A stretch of DNA of 16,987 bases, taken from Octopus sinensis. Lineage: Eukaryota. The first letter of the stretch is position 1, and each line of letters starts with the position of its first letter. Location of the stretch: contig NW_021825021.1 of NCBI RefSeq assembly GCF_006345805.1, positions 1-16,987 on the forward strand, read 5' to 3'. Shown in pieces: positions 1 through 16,987 of this stretch. A program made the translations under genes and the position numbers. The notes below the pieces were generated by a model. That model had not been told where the DNA came from. It ran no database searches and was given only the letters and a program-made list of their open reading frames with translations.

Positions 1-459
1 GTGCATGCCATCAAAGTGATAATGGCGTAAAATATACGAAGCCTGTATACCCATCATGCCTACCCGTCTGATAGAGTTACACCAGGCACATGCATCACAA
101 CTATTTGTGCCCGACATATCAAGATTAACAGCGCATGGCCTTGCAGGTCGGGCCCAGTTAGAATTTTCTTCAGGTCGAGTAGCCCATTCTGCTCAAATGG
201 TCCTTGAACAAGGGTTGTTTAAGGATGTTGAACGAAACACCCATGTTTCCAAAAGTAAATTATCCAAACCCCAAATAATTCCTCTCAACGAATGGCTATG
301 ATGCTCCCCTACTACTTCTGCTTGTGATCAGAGATGCACATATCGTCAGCCACTAAGGGGCATTCTCAATTGGCTAGGGTCAAACAACTGACAAGCATAT
401 CTCTGGTATTGAGCAGAATATTTGCTGTAGCCCGTCATTTATACCAAGACAACACAATG
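1..459. mobile_element. Unnamed interspersed repeat, copy 1 (retroelement-like, abuts a (TAA)n run; runs off the window edge)
   Basis: 199-459 matches the reverse complement of 4510-4770 at about 89% (29 mismatches in 261 nt by hand alignment). Both copies end against an (ATT/TAA)n run at the same end. No convincing ORF; orientation not resolvable from this window. Confidence 0.7.
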
Positions 460-485
460 ATATTATTATTATTATTATTATTACT

Positions 486-885
486 ATTCAGTAGTTTTAT
501 TTTTAAGCGTGCTTTCACATCACTACCGAGCGCAGCTCTGTGTGCCTTGGGTATGTGCTGTTGTGATTGTTGTGATGCTCTGATGGTTATGTATGGAAAG
601 TGTTCTGCGTAGGATGTGTGCAGTGCCTAGTAGTGCAATTTCTGTATGTTATATGTGTTTGTAAGTCCTGGTGTTTTTGTTATGTATTTGTCTGAATATT
701 TTTTTATCATGCCTAATGCACCTACTATGATAGGAATTGTTTCTGTTTTCAGGTTCCACATTCTAGTTACCTCTATTTCCAGGTCTTTGTATTTTGAGAG
801 TTTCTCCATTTCTTTTAGAGACACGTTGTCATCTGCCGGTATTGATACATCAATTAGAAACCATTTTTTTTCTTCATGATCTCTG
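486..885 (-). mobile_element. 5'-truncated R4/Dong-clade non-LTR retrotransposon: C-terminal restriction-like endonuclease (RLE) domain plus 3' UTR
   Basis: Minus strand reads IIVRDHEEKKWFLIDVSIPADDNVSLKEMEKLSKYKDLEIEVTRMWNLKTETIPIIVGALGMIKK...NIQK. After a 1-bp frameshift near 640 it continues IALLGTAHILRRTLS. This is the typical RLE tail of R4/Dong elements (IDVxIP..KExEKxxKYxxL..PIxxGALG..LGTAHILR). A short 3' UTR runs into (AAT)n at 461-484. Confidence 0.85.
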
Positions 886-949
886 ACTATTATTGATCTC
901 TGATTATTATTATGATCTCTGATTATTATTATGATCTCTGATTATTATT
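876..949. repeat. Four tandem copies of a 17-19 bp junction unit (AT)GATCTCTGAYTATTATT
   Basis: Units at 876-894, 895-911, 912-930 and 931-949. Each joins ~10 nt of retroelement sequence to ~9 nt of (ATT)n. Confidence 0.9.
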
Positions 950-953
950 ATTA

Positions 954-1011
<58 letters not shown>

Positions 1012-1159
1012 CATCATCATCATCATCACCATCTTCATCATTATTCAGCTTCCGATAAAATTTGAATTTGATAAATTACTCTACTTTTACTGTGGAGTAT
1101 TCTTTTTTTCATCATTTTCGTAGATATATGTTTTTGCAAGTGCACACACACCACATAGG

Positions 1160-1235
<76 letters not shown>

Positions 1236-1565
1236 ATAAAACACTCAAATATATGCTTTTGCATGTGCACACACACATACACACCACACACCACACACAT
1301 ATAACATATATATATTTATATATATAATATTATATATATATATATATATATATGCACACATATAAGCATATATAGATAGATAGACAGACAGACAGACATA
1401 GATAGCTAGATGTATCAGTATATATGTGTGTTTATGTGTGTCTGTGTGTGTGTATAAGTATATATATACATAGGAATATACATACATGTGTATGTATGCG
1501 TGCACATGTGTATGTGTATATATATGTATGTATGTAAGTTTATGCATACGTGTATGTACCATATG
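941..1565. repeat. Compound microsatellites: (ATT)n 941-1011, (CAT)n 1012-1040, (TA)n ~1160-1227, mixed CA/TA/GAYA/TGTA ~1240-1565
   Basis: Directly visible, with a short unique stretch at ~1043-1140. Confidence 0.95.
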
Positions 1566-1595
1566 TTCCAGGGTTCGCTGCGTATAGCGAAAGCG

Positions 1596-1680
1596 GAAAG
1601 GTCGCGGATGGAAGGCCTTTGATCATAGATCTGCTTCATCAGAGCTGACCTGGGGATAAAAACAAACAAAAAAAAAACCA
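1596..1680 (+). mobile_element. Probable short 3'-end remnant of a LINE/SINE with an A/AAC-rich tail
   Basis: GC-richer island (GGATGGAAGGCCTTTGATCATAGATCTGCTTCATCAGAGCTGACCTGGGG) followed by ATAAAAACAAACAAAAAAAAAA. Resembles a repeat end I recall from octopus DNA; not verifiable here. Confidence 0.35.
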
Positions 1681-1682
1681 AG

Positions 1683-2112
1683 ACCCCTTCCCCGACCTCA
1701 TCCCCTCACCTAACCTCCAAATCCATGCTTTCGTCAAATAAATGACAGTTAACTGCCATCTCCCACTACAACTCCCGACCGATTTTTACTCCTACCACTT
1801 CACAAGTCAATACATTCCATTCCTCCTACTCCGCCATCGACGTCCTTCAATTCCGAACATCCATCTCCCAACCTCTTACTAAATCTTTCTTCCTCCTACC
1901 ATCTCACAACTCACCATCTCCCACCGCCACCAAACCACGCTTTCGTCACGTTCCATCACTTTTCAAACCTCCATATTCCAATTCCTGAAATCGACCGATA
2001 TTTCCTCCCACTACCAAAACGACTCACACCAGCTCCTACCACTACTATTCAGTGACGTCAAGCACACTCCCACCACCTCGTAGCTGTCAATCTCTCACCG
2101 CCACTCGCCTAC
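1683..2112. other. C-rich, G-poor low-complexity tract with degenerate internal repeats
   Basis: Recurrent CCATCTCCCA, CTCCTACCA, CCAYGCTTTCGTCA and CGACCGAT motifs; very few G on the + strand. Confidence 0.7.
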
Positions 2113-2187
2113 AGTATCATCAAATGTTAAATCTCTGTGTCCGTAACATATTGATCTATTTGGAAGACGTAGTCGATATGACAGCTT

Positions 2188-2500
2188 CACACACACACAC
2201 ACACACACACAAACAAACAAGCACACACATGCACACGAACACACACACGCACACACACACACAAACAAACAAGCACACACATGCACACGAACACACACAC
2301 GCACACACACACACAAACAAACAAGCACACACATGCACAGGAACACACACACGCACACACATGCACATCACAAGGCAACACTCGATATCAATTTTTATGA
2401 TATATGTCTGTTCCAATACATACATGCACAAACGCACATGCATATACACACAACCACAAACACAGACAAACACACGCACACACACACATACACACACACG
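2188..2500. repeat. (CA)-rich tract containing a 3 x 52-bp higher-order repeat (2199-2354)
   Basis: Unit ACACACACACACAAACAAACAAGCACACACATGCACACGAACACACACACGC at 2199, 2251 and 2303; one substitution in the third copy. Confidence 0.9.
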
Positions 2501-2586
2501 TGTATAATACTGAAGAGCTAGGTTCGTTTTACATGCTCACAAAATCTTAAGTTACCTAAAGTTAGACAGATAGATAGATAGATAAG

Positions 2587-3038
2587 TTTCTTTATTGGCC
2601 ACACAGGGCTGCACACAGATGGGACAAGTTACAAGGTAGAGCTTTTCTTTTGGGGGATGAAAAAAACAAAAAACAAAAGAAACAAAAAAAGGGGTGGCGT
2701 AGGTTTTCGATCAAGAGGGATCGTAAAAGGGAAGAAAAGAACAAAAAAAAAGAAATAAAGGAAAAAAGAAAAAAGAAAAAGAAAAAAAGGAAAAGGAAAA
2801 GGAACAAAAGAAAAGAGAAATGAAAAAAAAGACAGAAAAAAGGGGAAAAAAAGGGGAAGGGAAAAAAAAAAAACGATCAATAGGGATCGTGTATCACAGT
2901 GTTATGATATATGGTGTAAAGGGGAAAGCAAAGTAAGGTTATCCGTGGGAAGAAAAGCCTACGAAAAAGACCACGGTAACCTTGGTCAATATTGTTATAT
3001 GTTACCACATTTGTTTGCAAGGGTAACCCTCTGTTTTC

Positions 3039-3040
<2 letters not shown>
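2587..3040 (-). mobile_element. 3' end / 3' UTR of a LINE-like element (possibly L1/Tx1 clade), 5'-truncated, flanked by (GATA)n on both sides
   Basis: Minus strand has a long pyrimidine-rich tract (2660-2875) and ends ...CAGCCCTGTGTGGCCAATAAAGAAA with an AATAAA signal. The last ~49 nt match the tail of the SINE at 14751-14796. No coding sequence remains, so the clade call is a guess. Confidence 0.55.

Positions 3041-3104
<64 letters not shown>
3041..3104. repeat. (GATA)16 microsatellite
   Basis: Perfect run; a (GATA)4 run lies at 2569-2584 on the other side of the LINE-like fragment. Confidence 0.95.
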
Positions 3105-3107
<3 letters not shown>

Positions 3108-3109
3108 TA

Positions 3110-3704
3110 GGTGCAGGTGTAGCTGTGTAGTAGGGAGTTTGCTTCCTAACCACATGATTCCAGGTTCAGTTCCACTGCGTTGCACCTTCGGCTAGTGTCT
3201 TCTACTATAACCGCGGGCTGACCAAGGCCTTCGTTGACCTTCGAAACGCGGAGTAAATGAAACAGAGGCGACTGAAGAAGGGGAATTTTCCTTGTTTTGT
3301 ATGTCCTGTACGCTATTTTTTCGTTGTTCAAGAAATATGTCCATTTCCTTGTTTATGTTTTCGTTTCTCATTCTGTTCGACGTTTTTTTGGTGTCCTTTA
3401 CCCATATATGCATGTATATATACATGTAGATATATATACGTACATATATATATGTATATATGCATATGTTTTATTTATTAATTCGTTATATATATATATA
3501 TATATAGTGTTTCAAATCGGCATATAAAGTGTGTTTGTGTGTTTCTTTGTTTGTCCCGCACCACCGGTTGACAACTGGTATTGGTGTCTTTACGGCCCCG
3601 TAAATAAGCAGTTTGGTAAATGAACCCAACAGAATAAGTACCAGATTCCTCTAGACGGTGCCCCAGCATGACCGCAGTCTAATGGCTGAAAGAAGATAAA
3701 AGAT
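3110..3704 (+). mobile_element. tRNA-derived SINE family A, copy 1 (diverged, interrupted by foreign sequence at ~3234-3405)
   Basis: Head GGTGCAGGTGTAGCTGTGTAGT, B-box GGTTCAGTTCC (3163-3173) and core GCACCTTCGGCTAGTGTCTTCTACTAT align to 12209-12330. Tail ~3525-3704 (..CCAGCATGACCGCAGTCTAATGGCTGAAAGAAG) aligns to ~12415-12614. Confidence 0.8.
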
Positions 3705-3865
3705 GTATGTATGCAAATGTATGAGTGTGTTTACGAATGTCATAAAAGTTAAGTGTAATAAAAGAAAAGTTCATAATTACTTCTTTCTCGTCTCAACAGA
3801 GTCCACGTGTTGGTGTTTTGTGTGTGAGAACGTAATGGCTGTCTTGTGCTACAGCCATCGATTCT

Positions 3866-4401
3866 AATCACCGCAGATATGAAATTGACTCCTCGCTTCT
3901 TATCCGTAACTGGATGGATCCATATCGTGACCGTATTATTGCACAGTATTCTGTGCAATAAAAAAAACTTCTTCGCAATGGTTGGACCAAAATGAAGCAC
4001 CGAAAACCTTCCCTAAACCCGAGCTCTTCAAGAAGAAGGGTATGGTGAATGTTTGATGGTGTACTGATAGACTCATCCATTATACCTTCTTAAAATCAGG
4101 AAGATCCATTACAGCAGAAACATATTGACATGAAATTGCCAGCATGAACGAAAAACTCCTACTCCTCCGCCCCAAACTGGTCAACAGAAAATGGCCAATC
4201 GTTCTTCATGACAATGCTCGACCAGGCGTTTCACTACTGACGCTCCAGGAGTTGAAGGAACTTAGCTACGAAGTTTTTCCCCACCCAGCTTATTTCCCAG
4301 ACCTTTATCCTACCGACTACCACTTCTTCAAGCACTATGTTGGTTTCCTGCGAGAGAAGGGGTTCAAAAATCAAAACGATGCTGAAATTGCGTTCAAAGA
4401 T
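3866..4401 (+). pseudogene. Mariner (cecropia/Hsmar1-like) DD34D transposase pseudogene fragment
   Basis: Reads NHRRYEIDSSLLIRN..DRII, then a deletion/frameshift removing the first catalytic TCDEKW, then SSQWLDQNEAPKTFPKPELFKKKGMVNV*WCTDRLIHYTFLKSGRSITAETY*HEIASMNEKL..LVNRKWPIVLHDNARP..PHPAYFPDLYPTDYHFFKH..FKNQNDAEIAFKD. Asp codons at 4210 and 4315 are 34 residues apart. In-frame TGA at 4054 and 4126. No TIRs seen. Confidence 0.93.
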
Positions 4402-4415
4402 AAATTAATATATAG

Positions 4416-4430
4416 TTCTTCTTCTTCTTC

Positions 4431-4498
<68 letters not shown>
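4416..4498. repeat. (TTC)5 + (TAA)22 microsatellite
   Basis: Directly visible; lies between the truncated mariner and repeat copy 2. Confidence 0.95.
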
Positions 4499-4499
4499 G

Positions 4500-4775
4500 T
4501 CATCATGTCCATTGTTTTGTCTTGGTATAAAAGATGGGCTACAGCAAATATTCTGCTCAATACCACATATACGCTTGTCAGTTGTTTGACCATGACCATT
4601 TGAGCATGTCCCTTAGTGGCTGACGATATGTGCATCTCTGATCACGAGTAGAAGTAGTGGGGGAGCACCATAGCCGTGTGTTGAGAGGGATTGTTTGGGG
4701 TTTGAATAATTCACCTCTGGAAACATGGGTGGTTCTTTCAACATCCTTAAACAACCCTTATTCAGGGACCTTTTT
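4500..4775. mobile_element. Unnamed interspersed repeat, copy 2 (inverted relative to copy 1)
   Basis: 4510-4770 is the reverse complement of 199-459 at about 89% identity. Confidence 0.75.
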
Positions 4776-4856
4776 AGACAGACACACATACAGAGAGACA
4801 GACACACAGACTGACAGACAGACAGACAGACAAACAGACAGATAGACAGATAGATC

Positions 4857-4903
<47 letters not shown>

Positions 4904-4967
4904 GGATGGATGGACAGGCAGACAGATGGTCAGACAGACAGACAGACAGACAGACAGATAGATAGAA
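4776..4967. repeat. Compound tetranucleotide array GACA/GATA/GATG
   Basis: Directly visible. Confidence 0.95.
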
Positions 4968-5247
4968 AGAACCCTGTTATTTAGTTGTGCCAATTGAAGT
5001 CCTCGCCTCGTGCCAATATAATACCATAAAAAATGCCGTTCGTTATTGCATTTGACCATCAAAATATCGCGTGACACATATATAGAAAATCGATATATAG
5101 GATAATCAATACTAAACTGACTTGATATGATTAATACTTGAGCTGATACTATAAAACTATGATATATCATCCGATATCATATACATTTCATGGCGTCACG
5201 TGTTGATATCTTATAGAGACATGGTAATTTCACTAAGAGAAACGGGC

Positions 5248-5765
5248 ATGCATGTGTGTGTGTATATATATGCATGTATGTATACGTGTGTGTGTATTTT
5301 ATATACATAGATAGATATTTGTGTATGTGTGTGCGTACATGTGTGTGTTTTTCTGTGTGTGTGTAAGTATGTATATATGCATATATGCATGTATGTATGT
5401 ATGCATATGTGTATGTGTTCTTATATAGATAGATATTTGTGTATATGTGTGCGTGCGTGTGTGTGTGAGTGTGTGCGTGTGTGAATGCGTGCGTGTGTAA
5501 GTGTGAGAGCTTGTCTGTGCGTAAGTATGTATATATGCATGTATGCGTGTATGTATGTATGTATGTATGTATGTGTGTGTGTTCTTATATAGATAGATAG
5601 ATAGATATTCGTGTATGTGCGTGCGTGCGTGCATGTGTGTGAGTGTGTGTGCGTGTATGTATGTATATATGCATGTATGCATGTATGTATGTGCGTGTGC
5701 GTGTTTGCAGCGCACATGTATGTATGTATGGATGGATGGATGGATCGACCGATCGATCGATCGAT
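5248..5765. repeat. TG/TA/TGTA compound array with a degenerate internal triplication, ending in (GATC)3
   Basis: Anchor TT(C)TTATA..TAGATAGATATTYGTGTAT recurs near 5298, 5418 and 5582. Confidence 0.85.
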
Positions 5766-5772
5766 ATCTGAA

Positions 5773-6068
5773 GGTGCGTGACTTAGTGGTTACAGAATTC
5801 CGGCACAAGATGGTACGGTCTTCAGTTCGATACCCGACGGCGCTTTGTGTCCTTGAGCAAGACACTTTATTCCCATTGCTTCAGTCCACTCAGTTGGCAG
5901 AAAAGGGTAGTACCAGAATTACATAGGGCCAGCCTTGTCACATCTTGTGTCACGCTGAATCCTTGAACTACCGTAAGGTTACCTGTGTCTGCGGAGTCCT
6001 CAGCCACTTGTTCATTAATTTCTCAACCAAGTTGTCCCTTTAATCGGATCAATTCAGGATACTCGACC
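5773..6068 (+). mobile_element. tRNA-derived SINE family B (diverged)
   Basis: A-box TGACTTAGTGGT (5779-5790), B-box GTTCGATACC (5825-5834), then the common SINE central motif TGTGTCCTTGAGCAAGACACTTTA and CAGTCCACTCAGTTGGC. Confidence 0.8.
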
Positions 6069-6086
6069 GACCGGCAGATTTTATAT

Positions 6087-6614
<528 letters not shown>

Positions 6615-6690
6615 TATATATATATAGTTAGTTAGTTTTTGTATTTGGTTTCAAGACTCTTTATGTGAATGTGTGTGTTGGAGCATATTT

Positions 6691-6841
6691 TATTGCGCCT
6701 GGGAGAGACATTCTCTTGTAGTACCTTGTTACTTGACACACACACACCGGTTCGAGTCGAAATCGAACCAGTGGAAGTCGAACCGGTAAGTGTGTTAAGT
6801 AATAAGGCGCTAAAAGGGAATGAGTCTCCCTAGACACAATA
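6691..6841. repeat. ~150-bp imperfect inverted repeat (foldback / MITE-like)
   Basis: Arms 6691-6755 and 6778-6841 match at 51 of 66 aligned columns. The innermost 10 bp are perfect (ACCGGTTCGA/TCGAACCGGT). 22-nt loop; TA at both outer ends. Confidence 0.85.
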
Positions 6842-7087
6842 TGTGTATGTGTGTATATGTGTGTATACATATATATGTATATATATGTGTGTGTGTGTGT
6901 GAAAATATCTATATGTGTATATATATATATATAAATATATATATATATATGCATGTATGTATGCATATGTATATTTATATATATATATATATATATAAGC
7001 ATGTATAAATATATAAATGTGTGTGTATGTATGTATATATATAAATGTATATATAAATATACATACATACATACATACATACATACA

Positions 7088-7123
<36 letters not shown>

Positions 7124-7150
7124 CATACATATGTGCGTATATATACATAT
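6842..7150. repeat. TA/TG/(TACA)n compound microsatellite
   Basis: Directly visible. Confidence 0.95.
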
Positions 7151-7185
7151 ATTCATGGGATGACGTTGAGAAACATCAGAAGGAG

Positions 7186-7224
7186 TCTTTAACGTTTCGA
7201 ATCTATGCTCTTCTTCAGAAACGA
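7186..7224 (-). ncRNA. Minimal (Penelope-type) hammerhead-like motif, probably degenerate
   Basis: Minus strand: UC-G-UUU CUGAAGA A GAG-CAUAGA-UUC GAAA CG UU AAAGA. Core boxes present, 3-bp helix II, palindromic AACGUU in place of helix III, weak helix I. Confidence 0.45.
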
Positions 7225-7289
7225 GATAAAAGATGAAGAAAAAAAATACGAGTATGTGAAGGGTTATTAGATGAGTATGAAGTAAGAAT

Positions 7290-12060
<4,771 letters not shown>

Positions 12061-12208
12061 TAGACATAAGAGGGCGAGCCAAAAACTTCCAAGTTCTCTT
12101 TGTAAAAATTAATATGTAGTCTACTAAAACAGATTGCGTAATGATTCTGTTTAATGTAAAATGCTTTTCAAATGTAACATCACATAAAGTTAAATATTTA
12201 TAAACATA

Positions 12209-12614
12209 GGCGCAGGAGTGGCTGTGTGGTGAATAGCTTGCTTACCGACCACATGGTTCCGGGTTCAGTCCCACTGCGTGGCACCTTTAGCAAGTGTCTT
12301 CTACTACAGCCTCGGGCCGACCAAAGCCTTGTGAGTGGATTTGGTAGACGGAAACTGAAAGAAGCCCGTCGTATATATGTATATGTATATATGTGTGTGT
12401 GTATGTGTTTGTGTGTCTGTGTTTGTCCCCCCCCCAACATCGCTGGACAACCGATGCTGGTGTGTTTACGTCCCCGTAACACTAGCGGTTCGGCAAAATA
12501 GACCGATAGAATATGTACTAGGCTTACAAAGAATAAGTCCTGGGGTCTATTTGCTCGACTAAATACGGTGCTCCAGCATGGCCGCAGTCAAATGACTGAA
12601 GCAAGTAAAAGAGT
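12209..12614 (+). mobile_element. tRNA-derived SINE family A, copy 3 (most intact)
   Basis: GGCGCAGGAGTGGCTGTGTGGT head, B-box GGGTTCAGTCCC (12261-12272), core GCACCTTTAGCAAGTGTCTTCTAC, short internal TA/TG tract, and tail GCTCCAGCATGGCCGCAGTCAAATGACTGAAGCAAGTAAAAGAG. Confidence 0.9.
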
Positions 12615-12666
12615 ATTCATACATATGTATGCGTGCGTGTGCGTGTGTACGTGTGTGTGTGTGTTC

Positions 12667-12707
<41 letters not shown>

Positions 12708-13049
12708 CTCTACTGTTTTTAATTATTTGAATTCATCTTTGAGGAAGGAGCTGATTTCTAGCAATGATGCGAAACTCCATCGCTGGAATACAGATAACAA
12801 AGTCAGTTTCACATTTTAAACTTAAGAAAAGTCTTGCATGTTCTTACTGTTCCTCTTACAGAATGTGTTTGTAATCTGCGAACTTATTTCTTCTTCTGAA
12901 AACCCTAGCGTATCCAAAGTGGCACTTAGGCATATATGTATGTATGTCATTATTTCAAGATTTCTTGCCGATGGAGAAAGAACCAGTTTCTGTTCTAGAT
13001 CCAATACACCAGACGAACCGGTTGATTTTGTTCATTCATTATAAATCTT

Positions 13050-13129
13050 GAATTATGCTTGCACTGATGAGTAAAGAATGTAAACCACTGGACTGATTAC
13101 GAAATCACAGAAGATCTGCAGCTAAATTC
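13050..13129 (+). ncRNA. Type I hammerhead ribozyme motif
   Basis: Helix I 5' GAATTATGCTTGCA (13050-13063); CTGATGA (13064-13070); helix II GTAA/TTAC (13071-74 / 13097-100) with a 22-nt loop; GAAA (13101-04); helix III TC/GA around ACAGAA; AUC triplet (13114-16); helix I 3' TGCAGCTAAATTC (13117-13129). Predicted cut after 13116. Confidence 0.8.
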
Positions 13130-13306
13130 TGTTTTTAAATTACTTGTTTCGAGAGTTGTATTTGGTACGATATGTTTATTTATTTTAGTAGTTTTGACTT
13201 TAGGAGTCCCTCCTAGCGTGTGGCATTTATGTGTAATAATGCCCTCTATATAATATATATATATATATATATGTTGGTTCCTGTATATATATGTATATGT
13301 ATGTTC

Positions 13307-13347
<41 letters not shown>

Positions 13348-13759
13348 GTATAAATATATACATACATACAAACGAGGTATGTATGTTAGTGTGCGTTTTG
13401 GAGAATGAAAAAGAGGAAGAAAGAGATTATATAAAACTAGCGGTGTTTCTGAAGATATCCTTCCTTCATGAAATGACAGGACTTGAGAAGCGTTTTCTTT
13501 CTTGTGCCTTGGCATGCAAATTTGTAAATGCATATTCCACCAAAGAGAAAGTGCTGTACTTGTGTGTCTGATGCGAGAATTTTGGTAAGGAAATGCAAAA
13601 TCAAGCAAAAGGGTGTATTTCGGAAAACCGATGTAATACATAAATTTCAATGCAAAAATGAAAGTAGTAAACTTCACGACTAAAAATGTTACATTAGATT
13701 CACAATTAATGACATGCTCTCGTCAGTTGATTATGCATTTACATCACATTATAATGCTG

Positions 13760-14506
13760 CATGACAGTATCACAGTATCGACCAGACCATCAGATGCTGT
13801 TATACACCGCTGGTCACAATGCGCTTCCAATTCTGTCTTGATTGTGCCATTCTTTCCATCTTGACCTAAATTGCTTAACTTGATCGTCTTTCGATCATCG
13901 TGGAGGTTGTCCTTCCACGTGGTCTTTTCAGATCTTTTGGTTATCACTCGGCAACTACTCAGATTTACCTGTTGTCCATGAACCTTATCACATGACCAGC
14001 CCAGTGGAACTTGTACTGTCGACATCCTGCGATCACATCGTTCACTCCTCTCCGCTCCGTTGTCGAATTAATTCATTTCAGATATGCTTTCGTAATGGTA
14101 TTCCCAGCATGGATCTATCGATGGCCCTTTGCGTTGTAGCCAATTCATGTTCCATCCTCTTCGTAGTAGCCCACGTTTCACCTGCGCATAAGAGCGAAGG
14201 TACGATGGTGCTGTTGAAGATTCTGGCACGCATGGCATTGTCTTGCTTTGTCTTAAACACATCCTTTATTGAACTAAATGCTTCCCATCCTGCCCTTGTC
14301 CTTTTTGAGATTTCAGCGTCCATCTGTCGGCGCATATTCACTGAGTGCCCTAGAAAGACGTAATCCTGGACCTCCTTGATATCATCTCTCCAAAGCTCTT
14401 TACCACATGTCTGAAAATGGTCATCAAGGACATTAATAGGACAAGTGACGTGAACATCAACGGCGAGCGACCAACACAAGTCCGATTCGCAGACGACATT
14501 GTACTC
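13760..14506 (-). mobile_element. RTE-clade LINE, 5'-truncated with an inverted 5' segment; 9-bp TSD ATAATGCTG (13751-13759 and 14507-14515)
   Basis: Minus strand from 14383: DIKEVQDYVFLGH..DAEISKRTRAGWEAF..RARIFNSTIVPSLLCAGETWATTK..TQRAIDRSMLG..I*NELIRQRSG..WAGHV..DNR..PKDLKRPRGR (stops and frameshifts), ending in a GATACTGT x2 tail. Plus strand 14378-14509: DIISPKLFTTCLKMVIKDINRTSDVNINGERPTQVRFADDIVLI (RT core). Confidence 0.92.
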
Positions 14507-14565
14507 ATAATGCTGTTCAGGAAATAAAATTATAGACAGAGCATTTGTTGACTATTCTACATAGA

Positions 14566-14807
14566 GCGGCGGCAAGCTGGCAGAAACGTTAGCACGCCGG
14601 GCGAAATGTGTAGCTGTATTTCGTCTGCCGTTACGTTCTGAGTTCGAATTCCGCCAAGGTCGACTTTGCCTTTCATCCTTTCGGGGTCGATAAATTTAGT
14701 ACCAGTTACGCACTGGGGTCGATGTAATCGACTTAATCCGTTTGTCTGTCCTTGTTTGTCCCCTCTGTGTTTAGCCCCTTGTGAGTAGTAAAGAAATATA
14801 TACTGCC
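14566..14807 (+). mobile_element. tRNA-derived SINE family C with a Deu/Nin-like central domain; 12-bp TSD ATTCTACATAGA (14554-14565 and 14808-14819)
   Basis: A-box-like TGGCAGAAACGT, B-box GTTCGAATTC (14642-14651), central GGTCGACTTTGCCTTTCATCCTTTCGGGGTCGATAAATTTAGTACC (14658-14703) resembling the Deu/Nin SINE domain, and a LINE-like tail at 14751-14796. Confidence 0.88.
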
Positions 14808-15001
14808 ATTCTACATAGAATTCGACGCACAAAATACAAAAGGAGATTAACTGTGACATGTTTTGTAAATGACAAAACAAATGACAAAACAAACATAAAC
14901 ACATTAATATGACACACGCGAATTGACCATTGGATTCTACGAAGACTTAAAGGCTGCAGAATTCTAAATCCGGTGGAGATGATTTTTATCAATTTTCACA
15001 G

Positions 15002-15077
15002 AATCCTCACTATCCTTTGATACCTGTTGCCAACTACGCGAACAGAAGGTTGATTGATGTCATTATCGTTTCATTCG
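15002..15077 (+). CDS. Candidate 76-nt internal exon (phase 0 to phase 1), product unknown
   Basis: Acceptor TTTTTATCAATTTTCACAG (AG at 15000-15001) and donor G|GTGAGT (15078). One open frame: NPHYPLIPVANYANRRLIDVIIVSF. No homology recognised. Confidence 0.3.
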
Positions 15078-16796
15078 GTGAGTTCTTAAAAGTTTTAATA
15101 GACTAATGCGTTTCGAATTTAACATAAAGAACTGATAAGGATAATATTAATATATTTCATTAGAAATATTAAACTCTAACATATTTGTGCTTTTAATAGA
15201 ATGTGTGTGTGTGTGTTAAAAATATTGGAAAATTGCGTATGTGTAAAACTTCGAAGATTGCAAAGGAAATAACTCGTGACATTTAATTTTTTAGAATTTT
15301 AATTTGTAAAATCTAAAGATAATATGAACCAAGCTATTTTAAGTTTTGGGAATTTTTAACCGTACGAAGTATATAATGCTACTGTTTCAATCAGCTTTTT
15401 TGTAATAAATTATTGCTAACCAAATACTTTGAGGCTGTCTGAACCGACCTGTCCCCTCTGACATTCTGCTTAATCAATTGTGGTCTTGAACTTATGTAAT
15501 TAATTTCTCACATAAACAAAGTTAGCAACATAAATTTCAAGGAAAATTATCAGGGACATAGTGAGTGTTGTGGTTGAAAATTGATCACTTAATTTCAACA
15601 GCCGACGATTCGTTTTTGTTTGTTTTTTTTTTTCTTTTTTCTTTCAAAAACCAAATGTGCTTCGAGACGCTTGCAGAAAATTGTTTCCGGTTTCTTCCTA
15701 CATGTATGAATATGTTGGTTAAAATGAACTTTAAAATAATTCTCGGTCAATCCAATACAGTTTCTGAGAACATACTTTTCATATGACTGTGAAATTTATA
15801 GAGCATTATAAAAATAGTTACCACTAGATAAGACAAAATTTTGTTAAAATCTTTTGGGGGAATTATATGGTTACTGAGTCCTGGAAAATTTTGCAAGTAT
15901 GGTCAGCTTTAATCATACCTTTTTTAAAATCTTTTAGTGTCTATGATTCATGAGAAATAGCAAGAAATTAAATTTAAGAACTCTCTGACAATGTGTGCAC
16001 TACTTTTAAACTAAAGACTGGATTATACCATAACGTGTCTTTTTAGTCAGTTTCTACTCTTATGTGTATTGGAGTGTGTCGTGTAAGGTATTTATTTGTA
16101 AAGATTACAAACAGCATTATTATAATCATGACAAGGACAATCAACCATAATTCCATTTGAAGATAACGAAAAAACATTTACCAACATGTGGGACTAAATT
16201 TATTAGGACCATAAAGTGTGATTTGAAACCTTATTTATATAATCTTTCATTAGGTTTTCAATATGAGTAAAACTAATTCGTTTCTAAATTTAAAGGGATA
16301 TCGAGAATATAAAATACAATGAGGAGAGGGACGATGAGAATTGTTAAATCATTATTAAATAACTTTATAAAGTATTTTCTATAAATAGCAAGCTCGTGAC
16401 AGTCAATATTGTGCGAAAGCATGAGACTACCAACTTTGTATACACACCTTCACACGGTACGGTATCTTTTATGTAAAATGTTCAAAATATTGATTCCAAC
16501 TGTTTCGCATGATCCAGCTTCATAAGAGAAGCTTTTGCTATTCAAACAAAAGACCTCCGTTTCTTTCGCTCAATATAAGTTATCGAAACACAAAAGGGAT
16601 TTCCTTGCGTGCCAAATGAGCAGATTTGCTAATTAGCTAAGGTGATATTGGCGAAATTTGAATCTTTGAGGAGCGGTGTATGTGAGGAAAGGGCAAAAAT
16701 ACGATAAAATCAAATTGAAGTGAATTTGAAGTGTTGTTTGTCTTTAATACCAGTGAATCATGCAACTTGGGACATATTGTTGTTCCACAGTGATTT

Positions 16797-16942
16797 ATAT
16801 ATATGTAGATATATACATACATATATCTATATGTGTGTGTGTGTTTGTGTGTGTGTGTGGATGTGTGTGCACATTATATATATACATATATACAAATATA
16901 TATGTACATATATATGTATATAAATATACATATATATATATA
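16797..16942. repeat. TA/TG compound microsatellite
   Basis: Directly visible. Confidence 0.95.
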
Positions 16943-16987
16943 TTTTGTGAAATAGAAAGATGAATAATCTTGTTGCAGATTAATCAA

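What the first reader, a model, noticed from the sequence alone, without database searches (positions are those of the whole stretch)
13050..13129. Complete type I hammerhead ribozyme motif in otherwise unannotated DNA
Seen: all conserved core residues in order (CUGAUGA, G10.1-C11.1, GAAA, A15.1-U16.1, C17). Helix II has 4 Watson-Crick pairs. Helix III is short (A-U, U-A, C-G). Helix I can form 11 pairs with a 1-nt bulge and a 2x2 internal loop (GAAUUAUGCUUGCA / UGCAGCUAAAUUC). Core plus three complementary helices is very unlikely by chance in 17 kb. Established: type I hammerheads with short helix III occur in metazoan Penelope-like elements, retrozyme/satellite repeats and some conserved vertebrate introns, and AUC is a cleavable NUH triplet. 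Unusual here: a 22-nt loop II, a single copy in the window, and no recognisable host element. Inference: an active or recently active self-cleaving RNA, either a solitary retrozyme/PLE remnant or a domesticated intronic ribozyme on the same strand as the candidate exon at 15002.
Basis: partly seen in the sequence, partly recalled or inferred. Interest (0 to 1): 0.85.

Follow-up and report, generated by a model that had tools for sequence, protein, structure and literature searches.

The report
Hammerhead ribozyme in octopus-type retroelement copy
The hammerhead ribozyme motif is really there. It is one worn, truncated copy of a roughly 500-base non-coding mobile repeat present in hundreds to thousands of copies in this 2.7-Gb genome, so it is a new example of a known kind of ribozyme-carrying retroelement and not a domesticated gene part.

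Summary
A descriptor scan found it once in the window and never in 2000 dinucleotide shuffles.

It is not solitary. It lies in a copy (13021-13274) of a 492-nt, 32% GC, non-coding repeat truncated at both ends. That repeat has at least 390-430 ribozyme-bearing copies and about 1900 copies of its 3' part.

The family consensus is a better hammerhead than the window copy:
- Helix II is 4 bp, a 2x2 internal loop, 6 bp and a 6-nt loop.
- Helix III is 4 bp.
- Folding energy is -23.9 kcal/mol (z -3.3) for a consensus-like copy and -11.8 (z -0.4) for the window copy.

Across copies, the two core positions that chemistry leaves free are hypervariable. N7 is 49% non-U. H17 is C 47, A 36, U 17 and G 0. 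The other core positions vary like neutral control sites.

The repeat's architecture is that of Penelope-like elements: (TA)n targets, partial tandems, and head-to-head 5'-truncated pairs. No autonomous partner was found, and there is no covariation and no sign of an exon.

Verdict: a real hammerhead, a new member of the retrozyme / Penelope-like class. The window copy is a relic.

The parts
13021..13274 (+). Copy of the 492-nt repeat unit truncated at both ends (unit positions 157-409), 94% identical to the family consensus. The last ~15 nt merge into TA-rich sequence.
   Evidence: blastn and local alignment to the unit consensus built from 19 loci
13050..13129 (+). Type I hammerhead ribozyme motif (unit positions 186-264). 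Core is intact; 3 of the 25 consensus pairs are broken.
   Evidence: aligned with 29 other copies in A2/A3
13064..13070 (+). Core box C3-U4-G5-A6-U7-G8-A9 (CUGAUGA)
   Evidence: family-wide survey of this box
13071..13100 (+). Helix II. The proximal 4 bp GUAA/UUAC are kept. The 22 nt between them are the family's internal loop, 6-bp distal stem and loop, disrupted here by G>A, C>U and C>G.
13101..13116 (+). G12-A13-A14, then helix III (A15.1-U16.1, U-A, C-G; the fourth family pair A-U is lost), then C17. Predicted cleavage is between 13116 and 13117.
   Evidence: family survey
13002..13018 (-). 17-nt inverted copy of unit positions 144-160 abutting the 5' end of the truncated unit. This is a snap-back / head-to-head junction, seen on a larger scale at other loci.
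   Evidence: compare L003/L007, L022/L023, L027
13247..13368 (.). (TA)n microsatellite at the 3' end of the copy, the family's usual flank.

Best explanation
The motif is a real type I hammerhead ribozyme carried on the sense strand of a ~492-nt, non-coding, AT-rich retroelement family.

**What it is.** The family behaves like a non-autonomous, Penelope-like-element (PLE)-mobilised "retrozyme". The window holds one old copy, truncated at both ends.

**Proposed mechanism.**
- Shown: the consensus can fold as a hammerhead.
- Shown: the pattern of variation among copies respects hammerhead rules.
- Shown: the insertion architecture is PLE-like.
- Shown: every copy that reaches unit position 1 runs on into the unit's own 3' end.
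- Inferred: tandem or read-through transcripts self-cleave after position 17 (unit position 251), giving unit-length RNA with 5'-OH and 2',3'-cyclic phosphate ends.
- Inferred: this RNA can be ligated into a circle.
- Inferred: a PLE reverse transcriptase / GIY-YIG endonuclease nicks (TA)n microsatellites and primes at one of the unit's two AT-rich stretches (positions ~385-410 or ~485-492). It copies a template longer than one unit, circular or multimeric.
- Inferred: this yields copies with fixed 3' ends, variable 5' ends, short upstream repeats of the 3' end, and head-to-head truncated pairs.

**The window copy.** It keeps the catalytic core, helix I and the 4 proximal pairs of helix II. 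It has lost the distal helix II stem and one helix III pair. At best it would cleave weakly in vitro, and it has no evident role.
For: **Family membership and copy number.**
- 43 scored matches out of 771 candidates for the 101-nt stretch.
- 114 hits for a 24-mer inside the ribozyme.
- 429 hits for a pattern anchored on either side of the CUGANGA box, with 13 control hits.
- 392 hits for the cleavage-site pattern.
- 1909 hits for a 3' 30-mer, with 0 control hits.

**The consensus is a better hammerhead.**
- 96% of pair cells are paired, against 19-42% when the partners are slid.
- A consensus-like copy folds at -23.9 kcal/mol (z -3.26), with helices I and II in the centroid.
- The window copy folds at -11.8 kcal/mol, z -0.36.
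- Rfam Hammerhead_HH9 aligns the core and helices correctly on a consensus-like copy, at a sub-threshold 15.8 bits, E 0.12.

**Constraint, from surveys that did not select on the surveyed bases (hand tallies).**
- Variants per 100 copies in the first core box: C3 0, U4 10, G5 5, A6 2, N7 49 (U51 G24 A13 C12), G8 3, A9 4.
- G12 6%, and A13, A14, A15.1 and U16.1 each 1.6%.
- H17 is C47 A36 U17 G0 in 100 copies, and C35 A25 U2 G0 in 62 copies.
- 14 control sites outside the ribozyme vary 0-10%, mean 3.9%.
- In 31-33 copies, 6 of the 7 ribozyme sites with at least 20% variants are unconstrained positions. The seventh is C11.1>U, which keeps a G-U pair. Fisher P = 8e-4.
- The helix III stem is invariant while its loop varies in sequence and length.

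**Strand.** 5' ends are scattered and 3' ends are fixed, so the ribozyme strand is the RNA sense strand.

**PLE-like architecture.**
- (TA)n at one or both flanks in 21 of 28 loci, against 8.75% background.
- All 11 copies that reach unit position 1 are preceded by 14 to over 110 nt of the unit's own 3' end.
- Head-to-head 5'-truncated pairs.
- Full tandems at 501-524 bp spacing.
- These are the hallmarks listed for PLEs in PMC8557442 and PMC11167929. Animal retrozymes are argued to be PLE derivatives in 10.64898/2026.07.22.740005.

**Genome and unit context.**
- PLEs are abundant: 4846 GIY-YIG candidates and open frames up to 883 aa.
- The unit is non-coding (longest open frame 67 aa) and 32% GC.
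- The whole-unit RNA is more structured than shuffles, z -3.0.
Against: - No self-cleavage or transcription data exist here.
- No hammerhead model of Rfam reaches its gathering score.
- There is no compensatory covariation. The copies are too alike: 0 pairs changed on both sides.
- The invariant core positions are no more conserved in copies than neutral control sites. The constraint signal therefore rests on where the high-frequency (subfamily) variants fall, and copies are not independent events.
- The larger B subfamily has U10.1/U11.1 instead of the canonical G-C at the base of helix II. A minor subfamily carries U4>C. Amplification therefore did not strictly require a textbook core.
- No autonomous PLE sharing sequence with the unit was found among 30 endonuclease loci.
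- Genomic 5' ends do not pile up at the cleavage site. About 96 of 100 copies read through it, so the genome holds no direct footprint of cleavage.
- Upstream "tails" are 14 to over 110 nt long, not the discrete 30-40 nt reported for PLEs.
Confidence: 0.75

Rival explanations
1. The repeat family is real, but the hammerhead-like motif in it is a sequence accident with no catalytic role. The pattern of variation would reflect subfamily history, not selection.
For: - No Rfam hammerhead model reaches threshold.
- No covariation.
- Essential core positions decay at the neutral rate in copies.
- The most numerous subfamily has a U/U mismatch at 10.1/11.1.
- Subfamily variants are few independent events, so the Fisher test overstates independence.
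Against: - The consensus carries every invariant core nucleotide plus three well-formed helices in the right order. A descriptor for this gave 0 hits in 2000 shuffled 17-kb windows.
- The two most polymorphic core positions are exactly the two that hammerhead chemistry leaves free, and G17 is absent in 162 observations.
- A diverged relative (L042, 77% identical) keeps helices II and III, while one helix I pair becomes an A-A mismatch. It has a different loop II, loop III and H17.
- The motif lies on the sense strand.
- A U/U pair at the base of helix II occurs in the axolotl retrozyme ribozyme HHR_Amex2, which does self-cleave (PMC7229834).
Confidence: 0.12
2. The family is a hammerhead-bearing non-autonomous element, but it is mobilised by some machinery other than a Penelope-like element. 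A LINE acting on a SINE-like RNA is one example.
For: - No sequence similarity between the unit and any of 30 sampled PLE endonuclease loci.
- The ribozyme differs from the genome's standard minimal PLE hammerhead.
- Tails are of variable length rather than a discrete 30-40 nt.
- 5' truncation and 5' inversions also occur with LINE-type target-primed reverse transcription (established knowledge).
Against: - No tRNA, 5S or 7SL head in full-length units, and no poly(A) or LINE-like 3' tail.
- (TA)n targeting, partial tandems and head-to-head truncated pairs together are the published PLE signature (PMC8557442).
- PLEs are very abundant in this genome, with long open frames.
Confidence: 0.15
3. 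This copy is a domesticated, host-serving intronic ribozyme linked to an exon near 15002 on the same strand.
For: Only that the core of this copy is still intact.
Against: - The copy is truncated at both ends, 6% diverged, and has lost ribozyme pairs.
- It is one of hundreds of near-identical dispersed copies.
- Only 30-51-aa open stretches lie around 15002.
- Pfam finds nothing in the window's longer open frames.
- The contig is an unplaced 17-kb piece full of microsatellites.
Confidence: 0.02
4. The stretch is a box C/D snoRNA-like gene, because CUGAUGA and CUGA boxes are present.
For: Weak cmscan matches to box C/D families:
- SNORD58 12.4 bits and GlsR7 13.2 bits on the window.
- GlsR7 21.2 bits, E 0.004, on L009.
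Against: - All matches are far below gathering scores (42-75 bits).
- No terminal stem joins the flanks of the C box and the CUGA.
- The C box starts with C rather than a purine.
- The matches cover only fragments of the models.
Confidence: 0.01

Closest known systems
Metazoan non-LTR retrozymes (type I hammerhead repeats of cnidarians, mussels, axolotl; Cervera and de la Pena 2020, PMC7229834)
   Same: - A type I hammerhead on the sense strand of a short, non-coding, AT-rich (<45% GC) repeat present in hundreds to thousands of copies.
- Some copies are in tandem.
- The unit RNA is predicted to be highly self-paired.
- The genome also holds many PLEs with minimal hammerheads.
- The B subfamily shares the U/U mismatch at the base of helix II with axolotl HHR_Amex2.
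   Different: - The unit is longer: 492 nt against ~170-400 nt.
- Most loci are single or partial units rather than long tandem arrays.
- Helix II is unusually long (4 bp + internal loop + 6 bp) and helix III is 4 bp.
- circRNA and cleavage are untested here.
Penelope-like elements and their pseudo-LTR hammerheads (Cervera and de la Pena 2014, PMC4209133; Craig et al. 2021, PMC8557442; Frangieh et al. 2024, PMC11167929)
   Same: - Insertion into (TA)n microsatellites.
- Partial tandem copies.
- Adjacent inverted 5'-truncated copies.
- An upstream extension made of the element's own 3' end.
- Presence of a hammerhead.
- Paired hammerheads on opposite strands 100-700 bp apart.
   Different: - No RT / GIY-YIG open frame, so the element is non-autonomous.
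- No sequence similarity to the 30 PLE loci sampled.
- The ribozyme is not the minimal, dimer-only PLE type found elsewhere in this genome (GUAC-CUGAAGAG-ACCC...GGGUC-GAAAC-AUGU-GUC). It has a stable helix III and an extended helix II.
- Tails are variable (14 to over 110 nt).
Rfam Hammerhead_HH9 (RF02275) and Hammerhead_1 (RF00163)
   Same: Same topology (helix I open), same core, and an NUH site. HH9 aligns the core and all three helices correctly on a consensus-like copy.
   Different: - It scores 15.8 bits against a 52-bit threshold for HH9.
- It does not register at all against RF00163.
- The likely reason (inference) is the ~24-nt insertion in helix II.
- HH9 members are conserved single-copy intronic ribozymes of amniotes, whereas this is a dispersed repeat.
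Schistosoma Sm-alpha and newt satellite 2 hammerhead repeats (from my own knowledge of the literature)
   Same: Type I hammerheads embedded in abundant short interspersed or tandem repeats of animals.
   Different: - Different sequence and different unit.
- Those ribozymes have a 4-bp helix II closed by a loop that docks on a helix I bulge.
- Here the equivalent place is an internal loop followed by a further 6-bp stem.

Membership tests
Hammerhead ribozyme, type I | Conserved core C3 U4 G5 A6 N7 G8 A9 ... G12 A13 A14, A15.1-U16.1, H17 | tested here: met
   Present in the window copy. Present in 25 of 30 full-length copies examined.
Hammerhead ribozyme, type I | Three helices around the core, with helix I open (5' and 3' ends in helix I) and G10.1-C11.1 closing helix II | tested here: met
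   - Consensus helices are I 4+2+5 bp, II 4+6 bp, III 4 bp.
- 96% of pair cells are paired.
- The centroid fold reproduces helices I and II.
- G10.1-C11.1 is present in the A subfamily and in the window copy. The larger B subfamily has U/U there.
Hammerhead ribozyme, type I | Variation among relatives respects the fold (covariation) and the free positions N7 and H17 | tested here: inconclusive
   - No compensatory changes.
- N7 and H17 are hypervariable with no G17, and high-frequency variants avoid paired and core sites, P = 8e-4.
Hammerhead ribozyme, type I | Reaches the curated score of an Rfam hammerhead model | tested here: not met
   - No hit at gathering score.
- The best is HH9 at 15.8 bits against a 52-bit threshold, on a consensus-like copy.
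- None at E<=10 for the window copy.
Hammerhead ribozyme, type I | Mg2+-dependent self-cleavage 3' of position 17 | not testable with these tools
   Needs in vitro transcription.
Metazoan non-LTR retrozyme | Short non-coding, low-GC repeat unit carrying one type I hammerhead on the sense strand | tested here: met
   The unit is 492 nt and 32% GC, with a longest open frame of 67 aa. The ribozyme lies on the strand defined by fixed 3' ends and variable 5' ends.
Metazoan non-LTR retrozyme | Organised as tandem repeats (dimers to multimers) of ~150-450 bp | tested here: inconclusive
   - Some full tandems at 501-524 bp spacing.
- Most of the 28 loci hold a single unit, a partial tandem or inverted pairs.
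- The unit is longer than the published range.
Metazoan non-LTR retrozyme | Expressed as linear and circular unit-length RNA | not testable with these tools
   No transcript data are available. Indirect hint: all 11 copies that reach unit position 1 continue into the unit's 3' end, so the template was longer than one unit.
Penelope-like element (non-autonomous derivative) | Microsatellite, chiefly (TA)n, insertion targets | tested here: met
   21 of 28 loci have (TA)n at one or both flanks, against 8.75% of background 40-mers. The window copy has (TA)n at 13247-13368.
Penelope-like element (non-autonomous derivative) | Partial tandems / pseudo-LTR, and an adjacent inverted 5'-truncated copy | tested here: met
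   with many close head-to-head pairs. In the window, a 17-nt inverted piece lies at 13002-13018.
Penelope-like element (non-autonomous derivative) | Discrete 30-40-bp "tail" extension | tested here: inconclusive
   Upstream extensions exist in 11 of 11 full-length copies, but they range from 14 to over 110 nt. Four are about 37-50 nt.
Penelope-like element (non-autonomous derivative) | Sequence shared with an autonomous RT / GIY-YIG element (pseudo-LTR or 3' end) | tested here: not met
   None of 30 GIY-YIG loci (+/-1.5 kb) shows similarity by pattern, covariance model or blastn. The sample is 30 out of thousands, so the partner may simply not have been sampled.

The most novel reading that the evidence does not exclude
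The family would be a cephalopod lineage of retrozymes that is still producing ~0.5-kb self-cleaved, circularised RNAs. Its ribozyme, with a stable 4-bp helix III and a helix II extended through an internal loop, would work as a monomer, unlike the dimer-dependent minimal PLE hammerheads in the same genome. Reverse transcription would start at internal AT-rich sites of a circular template, primed from nicked (TA)n microsatellites. The observation that every full-length copy overruns the unit boundary would then be a genomic footprint of rolling-circle reverse transcription.
Probability: 0.25. Interest if true: 0.55.

Novelty: new member of a known kind. Interest (0 to 1): 0.35.

Why it matters
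Hammerheads in animal repeats, retrozymes and Penelope-like elements are well documented, so the existence of this one is not surprising.

Three things are of modest value:
- It adds a cephalopod family. My literature searches found no description of one.
- The family gives a clean population-style readout of hammerhead constraints inside one genome. N7 carries all four bases, position 17 carries C/A/U and never G, and the loops are free.
- The copy architecture offers a testable link between animal retrozymes and the PLE integration mechanism. That architecture is fixed 3' ends in two AT-rich stretches, (TA)n targets, and overrun of the unit boundary.

For annotation, the practical message is that such motifs should be checked for copy number before being read as domesticated ribozymes.

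Tried and rejected
- **Rfam at gathering and permissive thresholds.** No hammerhead call for the window. Only a sub-threshold HH9 match on a consensus-like copy. The weak C/D snoRNA matches were rejected because there is no terminal stem and the scores are far below cut-off.
- **Covariation on 30 copies.** None; the copies are too similar.
- **Direct genomic footprint of cleavage.** The test was whether 5'-truncated copies pile up at unit position 252. They do not: about 96 of 100 copies read through the site.
- **Search for the autonomous partner.** The methods were a 21-nt pattern, covariance model R1, blastn and blastn-short against 30 GIY-YIG loci and 30 RF00163 loci. There were no hits, apart from a diverged relative of the family found by chance in L042.
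- **SINE-type head (tRNA, 5S, 7SL) in full-length units.** None.
- **Exon near 15002 and Pfam on the window's open frames.** Nothing.
- **Cross-sample search of metagenome contigs for the ribozyme pattern.** 0 hits.
- **Fetching 60 more copies.** I replaced it with pattern searches containing N positions, which print the matched letters. The tallies from those lists were made by hand and may be off by one or two.
Full report
**1. The observation**

- GAAUUAUGCUUGCA is the helix I 5' strand.
- CUGAUGA follows at 13064-13070.
- GUAA and UUAC form four Watson-Crick pairs that begin with G10.1-C11.1 and enclose 22 nt.
- GAAA is at 13101-13104.
- Helix III is short: A-U, U-A, C-G.
- C17 is at 13116.
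- UGCAGCUAAAUUC pairs back to helix I.

I wrote a descriptor requiring CUGANGA, G10.1-C11.1, helix II of at least 4 bp, GAAA, helix III of at least 3 bp, H17 and helix I of at least 4 bp. It finds this one site in the window and none in 2000 dinucleotide-preserving shuffles, both strands.

Curated models do not call it. No Rfam family reaches its gathering score in the window. No hammerhead model reaches E<=10 on 12950-13250; only weak box C/D matches appear. On its own the stretch folds no better than shuffles: -10.6 kcal/mol, z -0.26.

**2. It is not solitary**

The window is contig C1492 of a 2.72-Gb assembly with 13,516 contigs, the 30 largest of which are chromosome-sized. From my own knowledge this fits an Octopus genome (n = 30); I did not test that.

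The 101 nt around the motif have 43 scored matches out of 771 first-look candidates, at 86-92% identity over whatever length each match covers; two of them cover only 50-55 nt. Pattern counts are:

| Pattern | Hits | Reversed-pattern control |
|---|---|---|
| 24-mer inside the ribozyme, <=1 mismatch | 114 | 0 |
| Anchors either side of the CUGANGA box | 429 | 13 |
| Cleavage-site pattern | 392 | 0 |
| 30-mer ~70 nt downstream of the ribozyme | 1909 | 0 |

So the motif belongs to a dispersed repeat with several hundred ribozyme-bearing copies and roughly two thousand copies of its 3' part.

**3. The family ribozyme and the window copy**

Thirty copies aligned in one orientation give a consensus that is a much better hammerhead.
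- Helix I is 4 bp, a bulged U, 2 bp, a 2x2 internal loop, then 5 bp.
- Helix II is GUAA/UUAC, a 2x2 internal loop (AG/GA), a 6-bp stem AGUGCA/UGCACU, and a 6-nt loop.
- Helix III is A-U, U-A, C-G, A-U with a 3-4-nt loop.
- With this structure 96% of pair cells are paired, against 19-42% when the partners are slid by 1-3 columns.

A consensus-like copy folds at -23.9 kcal/mol (z -3.26; 0 of 200 shuffles as good), and the centroid shows helices I and II of the hammerhead. The window copy reaches only -11.8 kcal/mol, z -0.36.

Against the consensus, the window copy has G>A, C>U and C>G in the distal helix II stem and two changes in helix III.

In the sample, 25 of 30 full-length copies keep the core, and 10 of 30 keep the core and all 25 pairs. 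The window copy keeps the core but has 3 broken pairs.

On a consensus-like copy, Rfam's Hammerhead_HH9 model aligns the core and all three helices correctly but scores only 15.8 bits (E 0.12, threshold 52). I infer that the long helix II explains why the models miss it.

**4. Is the fold under constraint?**

Within the family there is no covariation: 0 pairs changed on both sides. This is expected at ~5% divergence.

I surveyed the core without selecting on it. I used patterns whose anchors flank N positions and tallied the printed matches by hand.

*First core box, 100 copies.*

| Position | Variants per 100 |
|---|---|
| C3 | 0 |
| U4 | 10 |
| G5 | 5 |
| A6 | 2 |
| N7 | 49 (U 51, G 24, A 13, C 12) |
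| G8 | 3 |
| A9 | 4 |

*Second core box, 62 copies.*
- C11.1 varies in 18%, nearly all C>U at a CpG.
- G12 varies in 6%.
- A13, A14, A15.1 and U16.1 vary in 1.6% each.
- H17 is C 35, A 25, U 2, G 0.

*Cleavage site, 100 copies anchored only downstream of it.* H17 is C 47, A 36, U 17, G 0.

*Control.* Fourteen sites in the non-ribozyme part of the unit vary in 0-10% of 100 copies, mean 3.9%.

The two core positions that hammerhead chemistry leaves free are therefore about ten times more polymorphic than background. These are N7, and position 17 with any base but G (established knowledge; numbering as in PMC4209133). The one forbidden base at 17 is never seen. The essential positions behave like neutrally decaying sites.

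In 31-33 copies, the ribozyme sites with at least 20% variants are:
- N7;
- three loop II positions;
- H17;
- one internal-loop position of helix I;
- C11.1>U, which keeps a G-U pair.

That is 6 of 20 unconstrained positions against 1 of 59 constrained ones, Fisher P = 8e-4. The helix III stem (U-A, C-G, A-U) is invariant across subfamilies while its loop changes in sequence and length.

A 77%-identical relative (L042) keeps helices II and III, though one helix I pair becomes an A-A mismatch. It has a different loop II, loop III and H17.

*Caveats.*
- Copies are not independent events.
- The largest subfamily (B, about three quarters of 100 exact matches) has U10.1/U11.1 at the base of helix II, and a palindromic helix III, AUCAUAUGAU.
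- A U/U at that place is known in the self-cleaving axolotl HHR_Amex2 (PMC7229834).
- A minor subfamily has U4>C.

**5. The host element**

A consensus unit of 492 nt was built from 19 loci. It is 32% GC, and its longest open frame, even across a tandem junction, is 67 aa. The ribozyme occupies unit positions 186-264, with cleavage after 251.

No Rfam family (tRNA, 5S, 7SL) is found in full-length units. The unit RNA as a whole is more structured than shuffles (z -3.0), with the hammerhead helices kept in the global fold.

Mapping the unit onto 28 independent loci shows:
- fixed 3' ends in two classes, unit positions 491-492 and 396-410, both in AT-rich stretches (the second lies just after an AATAAA at 393);
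- scattered 5' ends, at positions 1-5, 20, 31, 35, 44, 83-88, 115-119, 135-158, 174 and 204.

This is the pattern of a retroelement whose RNA has the sense of the ribozyme strand.

Other architectural features:
- (TA)n lies at one or both flanks in 21 of 28 loci, against 8.75% of background 40-mers. Other microsatellites flank some of the rest.
- All 11 copies that reach position 1 continue upstream into 14 to over 110 nt of the unit's own 3' end.
- Head-to-head pairs of 5'-truncated copies are frequent.
- Full tandems occur at 501-524 bp spacing.

The window copy is unit positions 157-409 (13021-13274, 94% identical). A 17-nt inverted fragment of positions 144-160 lies at its 5' end (13002-13018), and (TA)n lies at its 3' end.

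These features match the published signature of Penelope-like elements:
- (TA)n targets, pseudo-LTRs from partial tandems, adjacent inverted 5'-truncated copies, tails and hammerheads (PMC8557442);
- internal initiation of reverse transcription (PMC11167929);
- paired hammerheads on opposite strands (PMC4209133).

A 2026 preprint argues that animal retrozymes are non-autonomous PLE derivatives (10.64898/2026.07.22.740005).

The genome has 4846 GIY-YIG candidates, 147 scored hits, and open frames up to 883 aa. It also carries the classic minimal PLE hammerhead, a different sequence family from ours. None of the 30 endonuclease loci I could fetch shares sequence with the unit. The autonomous partner is therefore unidentified.

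**6. Mechanism**

*Shown:*
- a foldable canonical hammerhead on the sense strand;
- variation that respects hammerhead rules;
- PLE-like insertion architecture;
- templates longer than one unit.

*Inferred:*
- Tandem or read-through transcripts self-cleave after unit position 251.
- Unit-length RNA may be ligated into circles.
- A PLE enzyme nicks (TA)n and primes at one of two internal AT-rich sites.
- It then copies round or along a multimeric template until it stops. This would give the two 3'-end classes, the variable 5' ends, the overrun of the unit boundary and the inverted pairs.

*Against a simple run-off model:* 5' ends do not pile up at the cleavage site. The genome therefore carries no direct footprint of cleavage.

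**7. Comparison and verdict**

The element works like a metazoan non-LTR retrozyme / PLE-associated hammerhead.

It meets these tests:
- the hammerhead core and helix tests;
- the non-coding, low-GC, sense-strand test;
- the PLE architecture tests.

It fails these tests:
- the Rfam thresholds;
- sequence similarity to a sampled PLE.

These tests are inconclusive:
- tandem organisation;
- a discrete tail;
- covariation.

Cleavage and circular RNA cannot be tested here.

My searches found no description of a hammerhead repeat in cephalopods. A metagenome scan found nothing.

I rate it a new member of a known kind: a real ribozyme family. The window copy is a decayed relic with no sign of domestication. 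Only 30-51-aa open stretches lie near 15002, and Pfam finds nothing in the window's open frames.

Noticed in passing
L031-L060 (G000 loci), e.g. L043:1501-1542: The genome carries a separate, abundant family of classic minimal Penelope-type hammerheads, followed by AAUAAA: GAUGUAC-CUGAAGAG-ACCC..GGGUC-GAAAC-AUGU-GUC|GUACC. Three hits (L038, L047, L054) have a ~65-nt insertion in loop II.
   Followed up: partly
G000 genome-wide; L061-L090: 4846 first-look candidates and 147 scored hits for the GIY-YIG endonuclease domain, several in open frames of 780-883 aa. Penelope-like elements are very abundant and some look intact. None of the 30 loci fetched is related to the unit in the window.
   Followed up: partly
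window 13002-13018 (-): A 17-nt inverted copy of unit positions 144-160 sits directly against the 5' end (position 157) of the truncated unit. It is a miniature of the head-to-head truncated pairs seen at L003/L007, L022/L023, L027 and many places.
   Followed up: yes
unit positions 385-410 and 485-492 (window 13249-13274 for the first): Copies end in two classes, both inside AT-rich stretches that abut (TA)n flanks. The first class lies just after an AATAAA at unit position 393. This suggests priming by microhomology at two internal sites.
   Followed up: partly
L008, L009, L010, L012, L015, L018, L020, L025, L026, L028, L029: Every copy that reaches unit position 1 continues upstream into 14 to over 110 nt of the unit's own 3' end. 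Position 1 is therefore not a true RNA 5' end, and the template must have been multimeric or circular.
   Followed up: partly
G000, 100 places listed: A larger B subfamily of the ribozyme has U10.1/U11.1, an AA/AA internal loop, a 4-5-nt loop II and a perfectly palindromic helix III (AUCAUAUGAU). Rare copies have U-G or U-A at 10.1/11.1.
   Followed up: partly
L042:1111-1390: A 77%-identical relative of the unit, 5'-truncated inside helix I right after (TA)n. Its 3' region differs and it again ends in (TA)n. It lies ~400 nt upstream of a minimal PLE hammerhead.
   Followed up: partly
window 1-16987: The window is a whole 16,987-bp unplaced contig with 66 tandem-repeat rows ((TA)n, (CA)n, (GATA)n, trinucleotide runs). 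It also has a few 100-190-aa open frames (627-941-, 4129-4530+, 14078-14551-) that look transposon-derived by eye, but they gave no Pfam match at a meaningful E-value: none at E<=0.01, and at E<=10 only a chance-level Secretin_N_2 hit for 4129-4530+ (E 0.97, 10.4 bits against a 23.4-bit cut-off).
   Followed up: partly
L074:127-227: A tRNA match (38 bits) lies next to one of the Penelope-type endonuclease loci.
   Followed up: no
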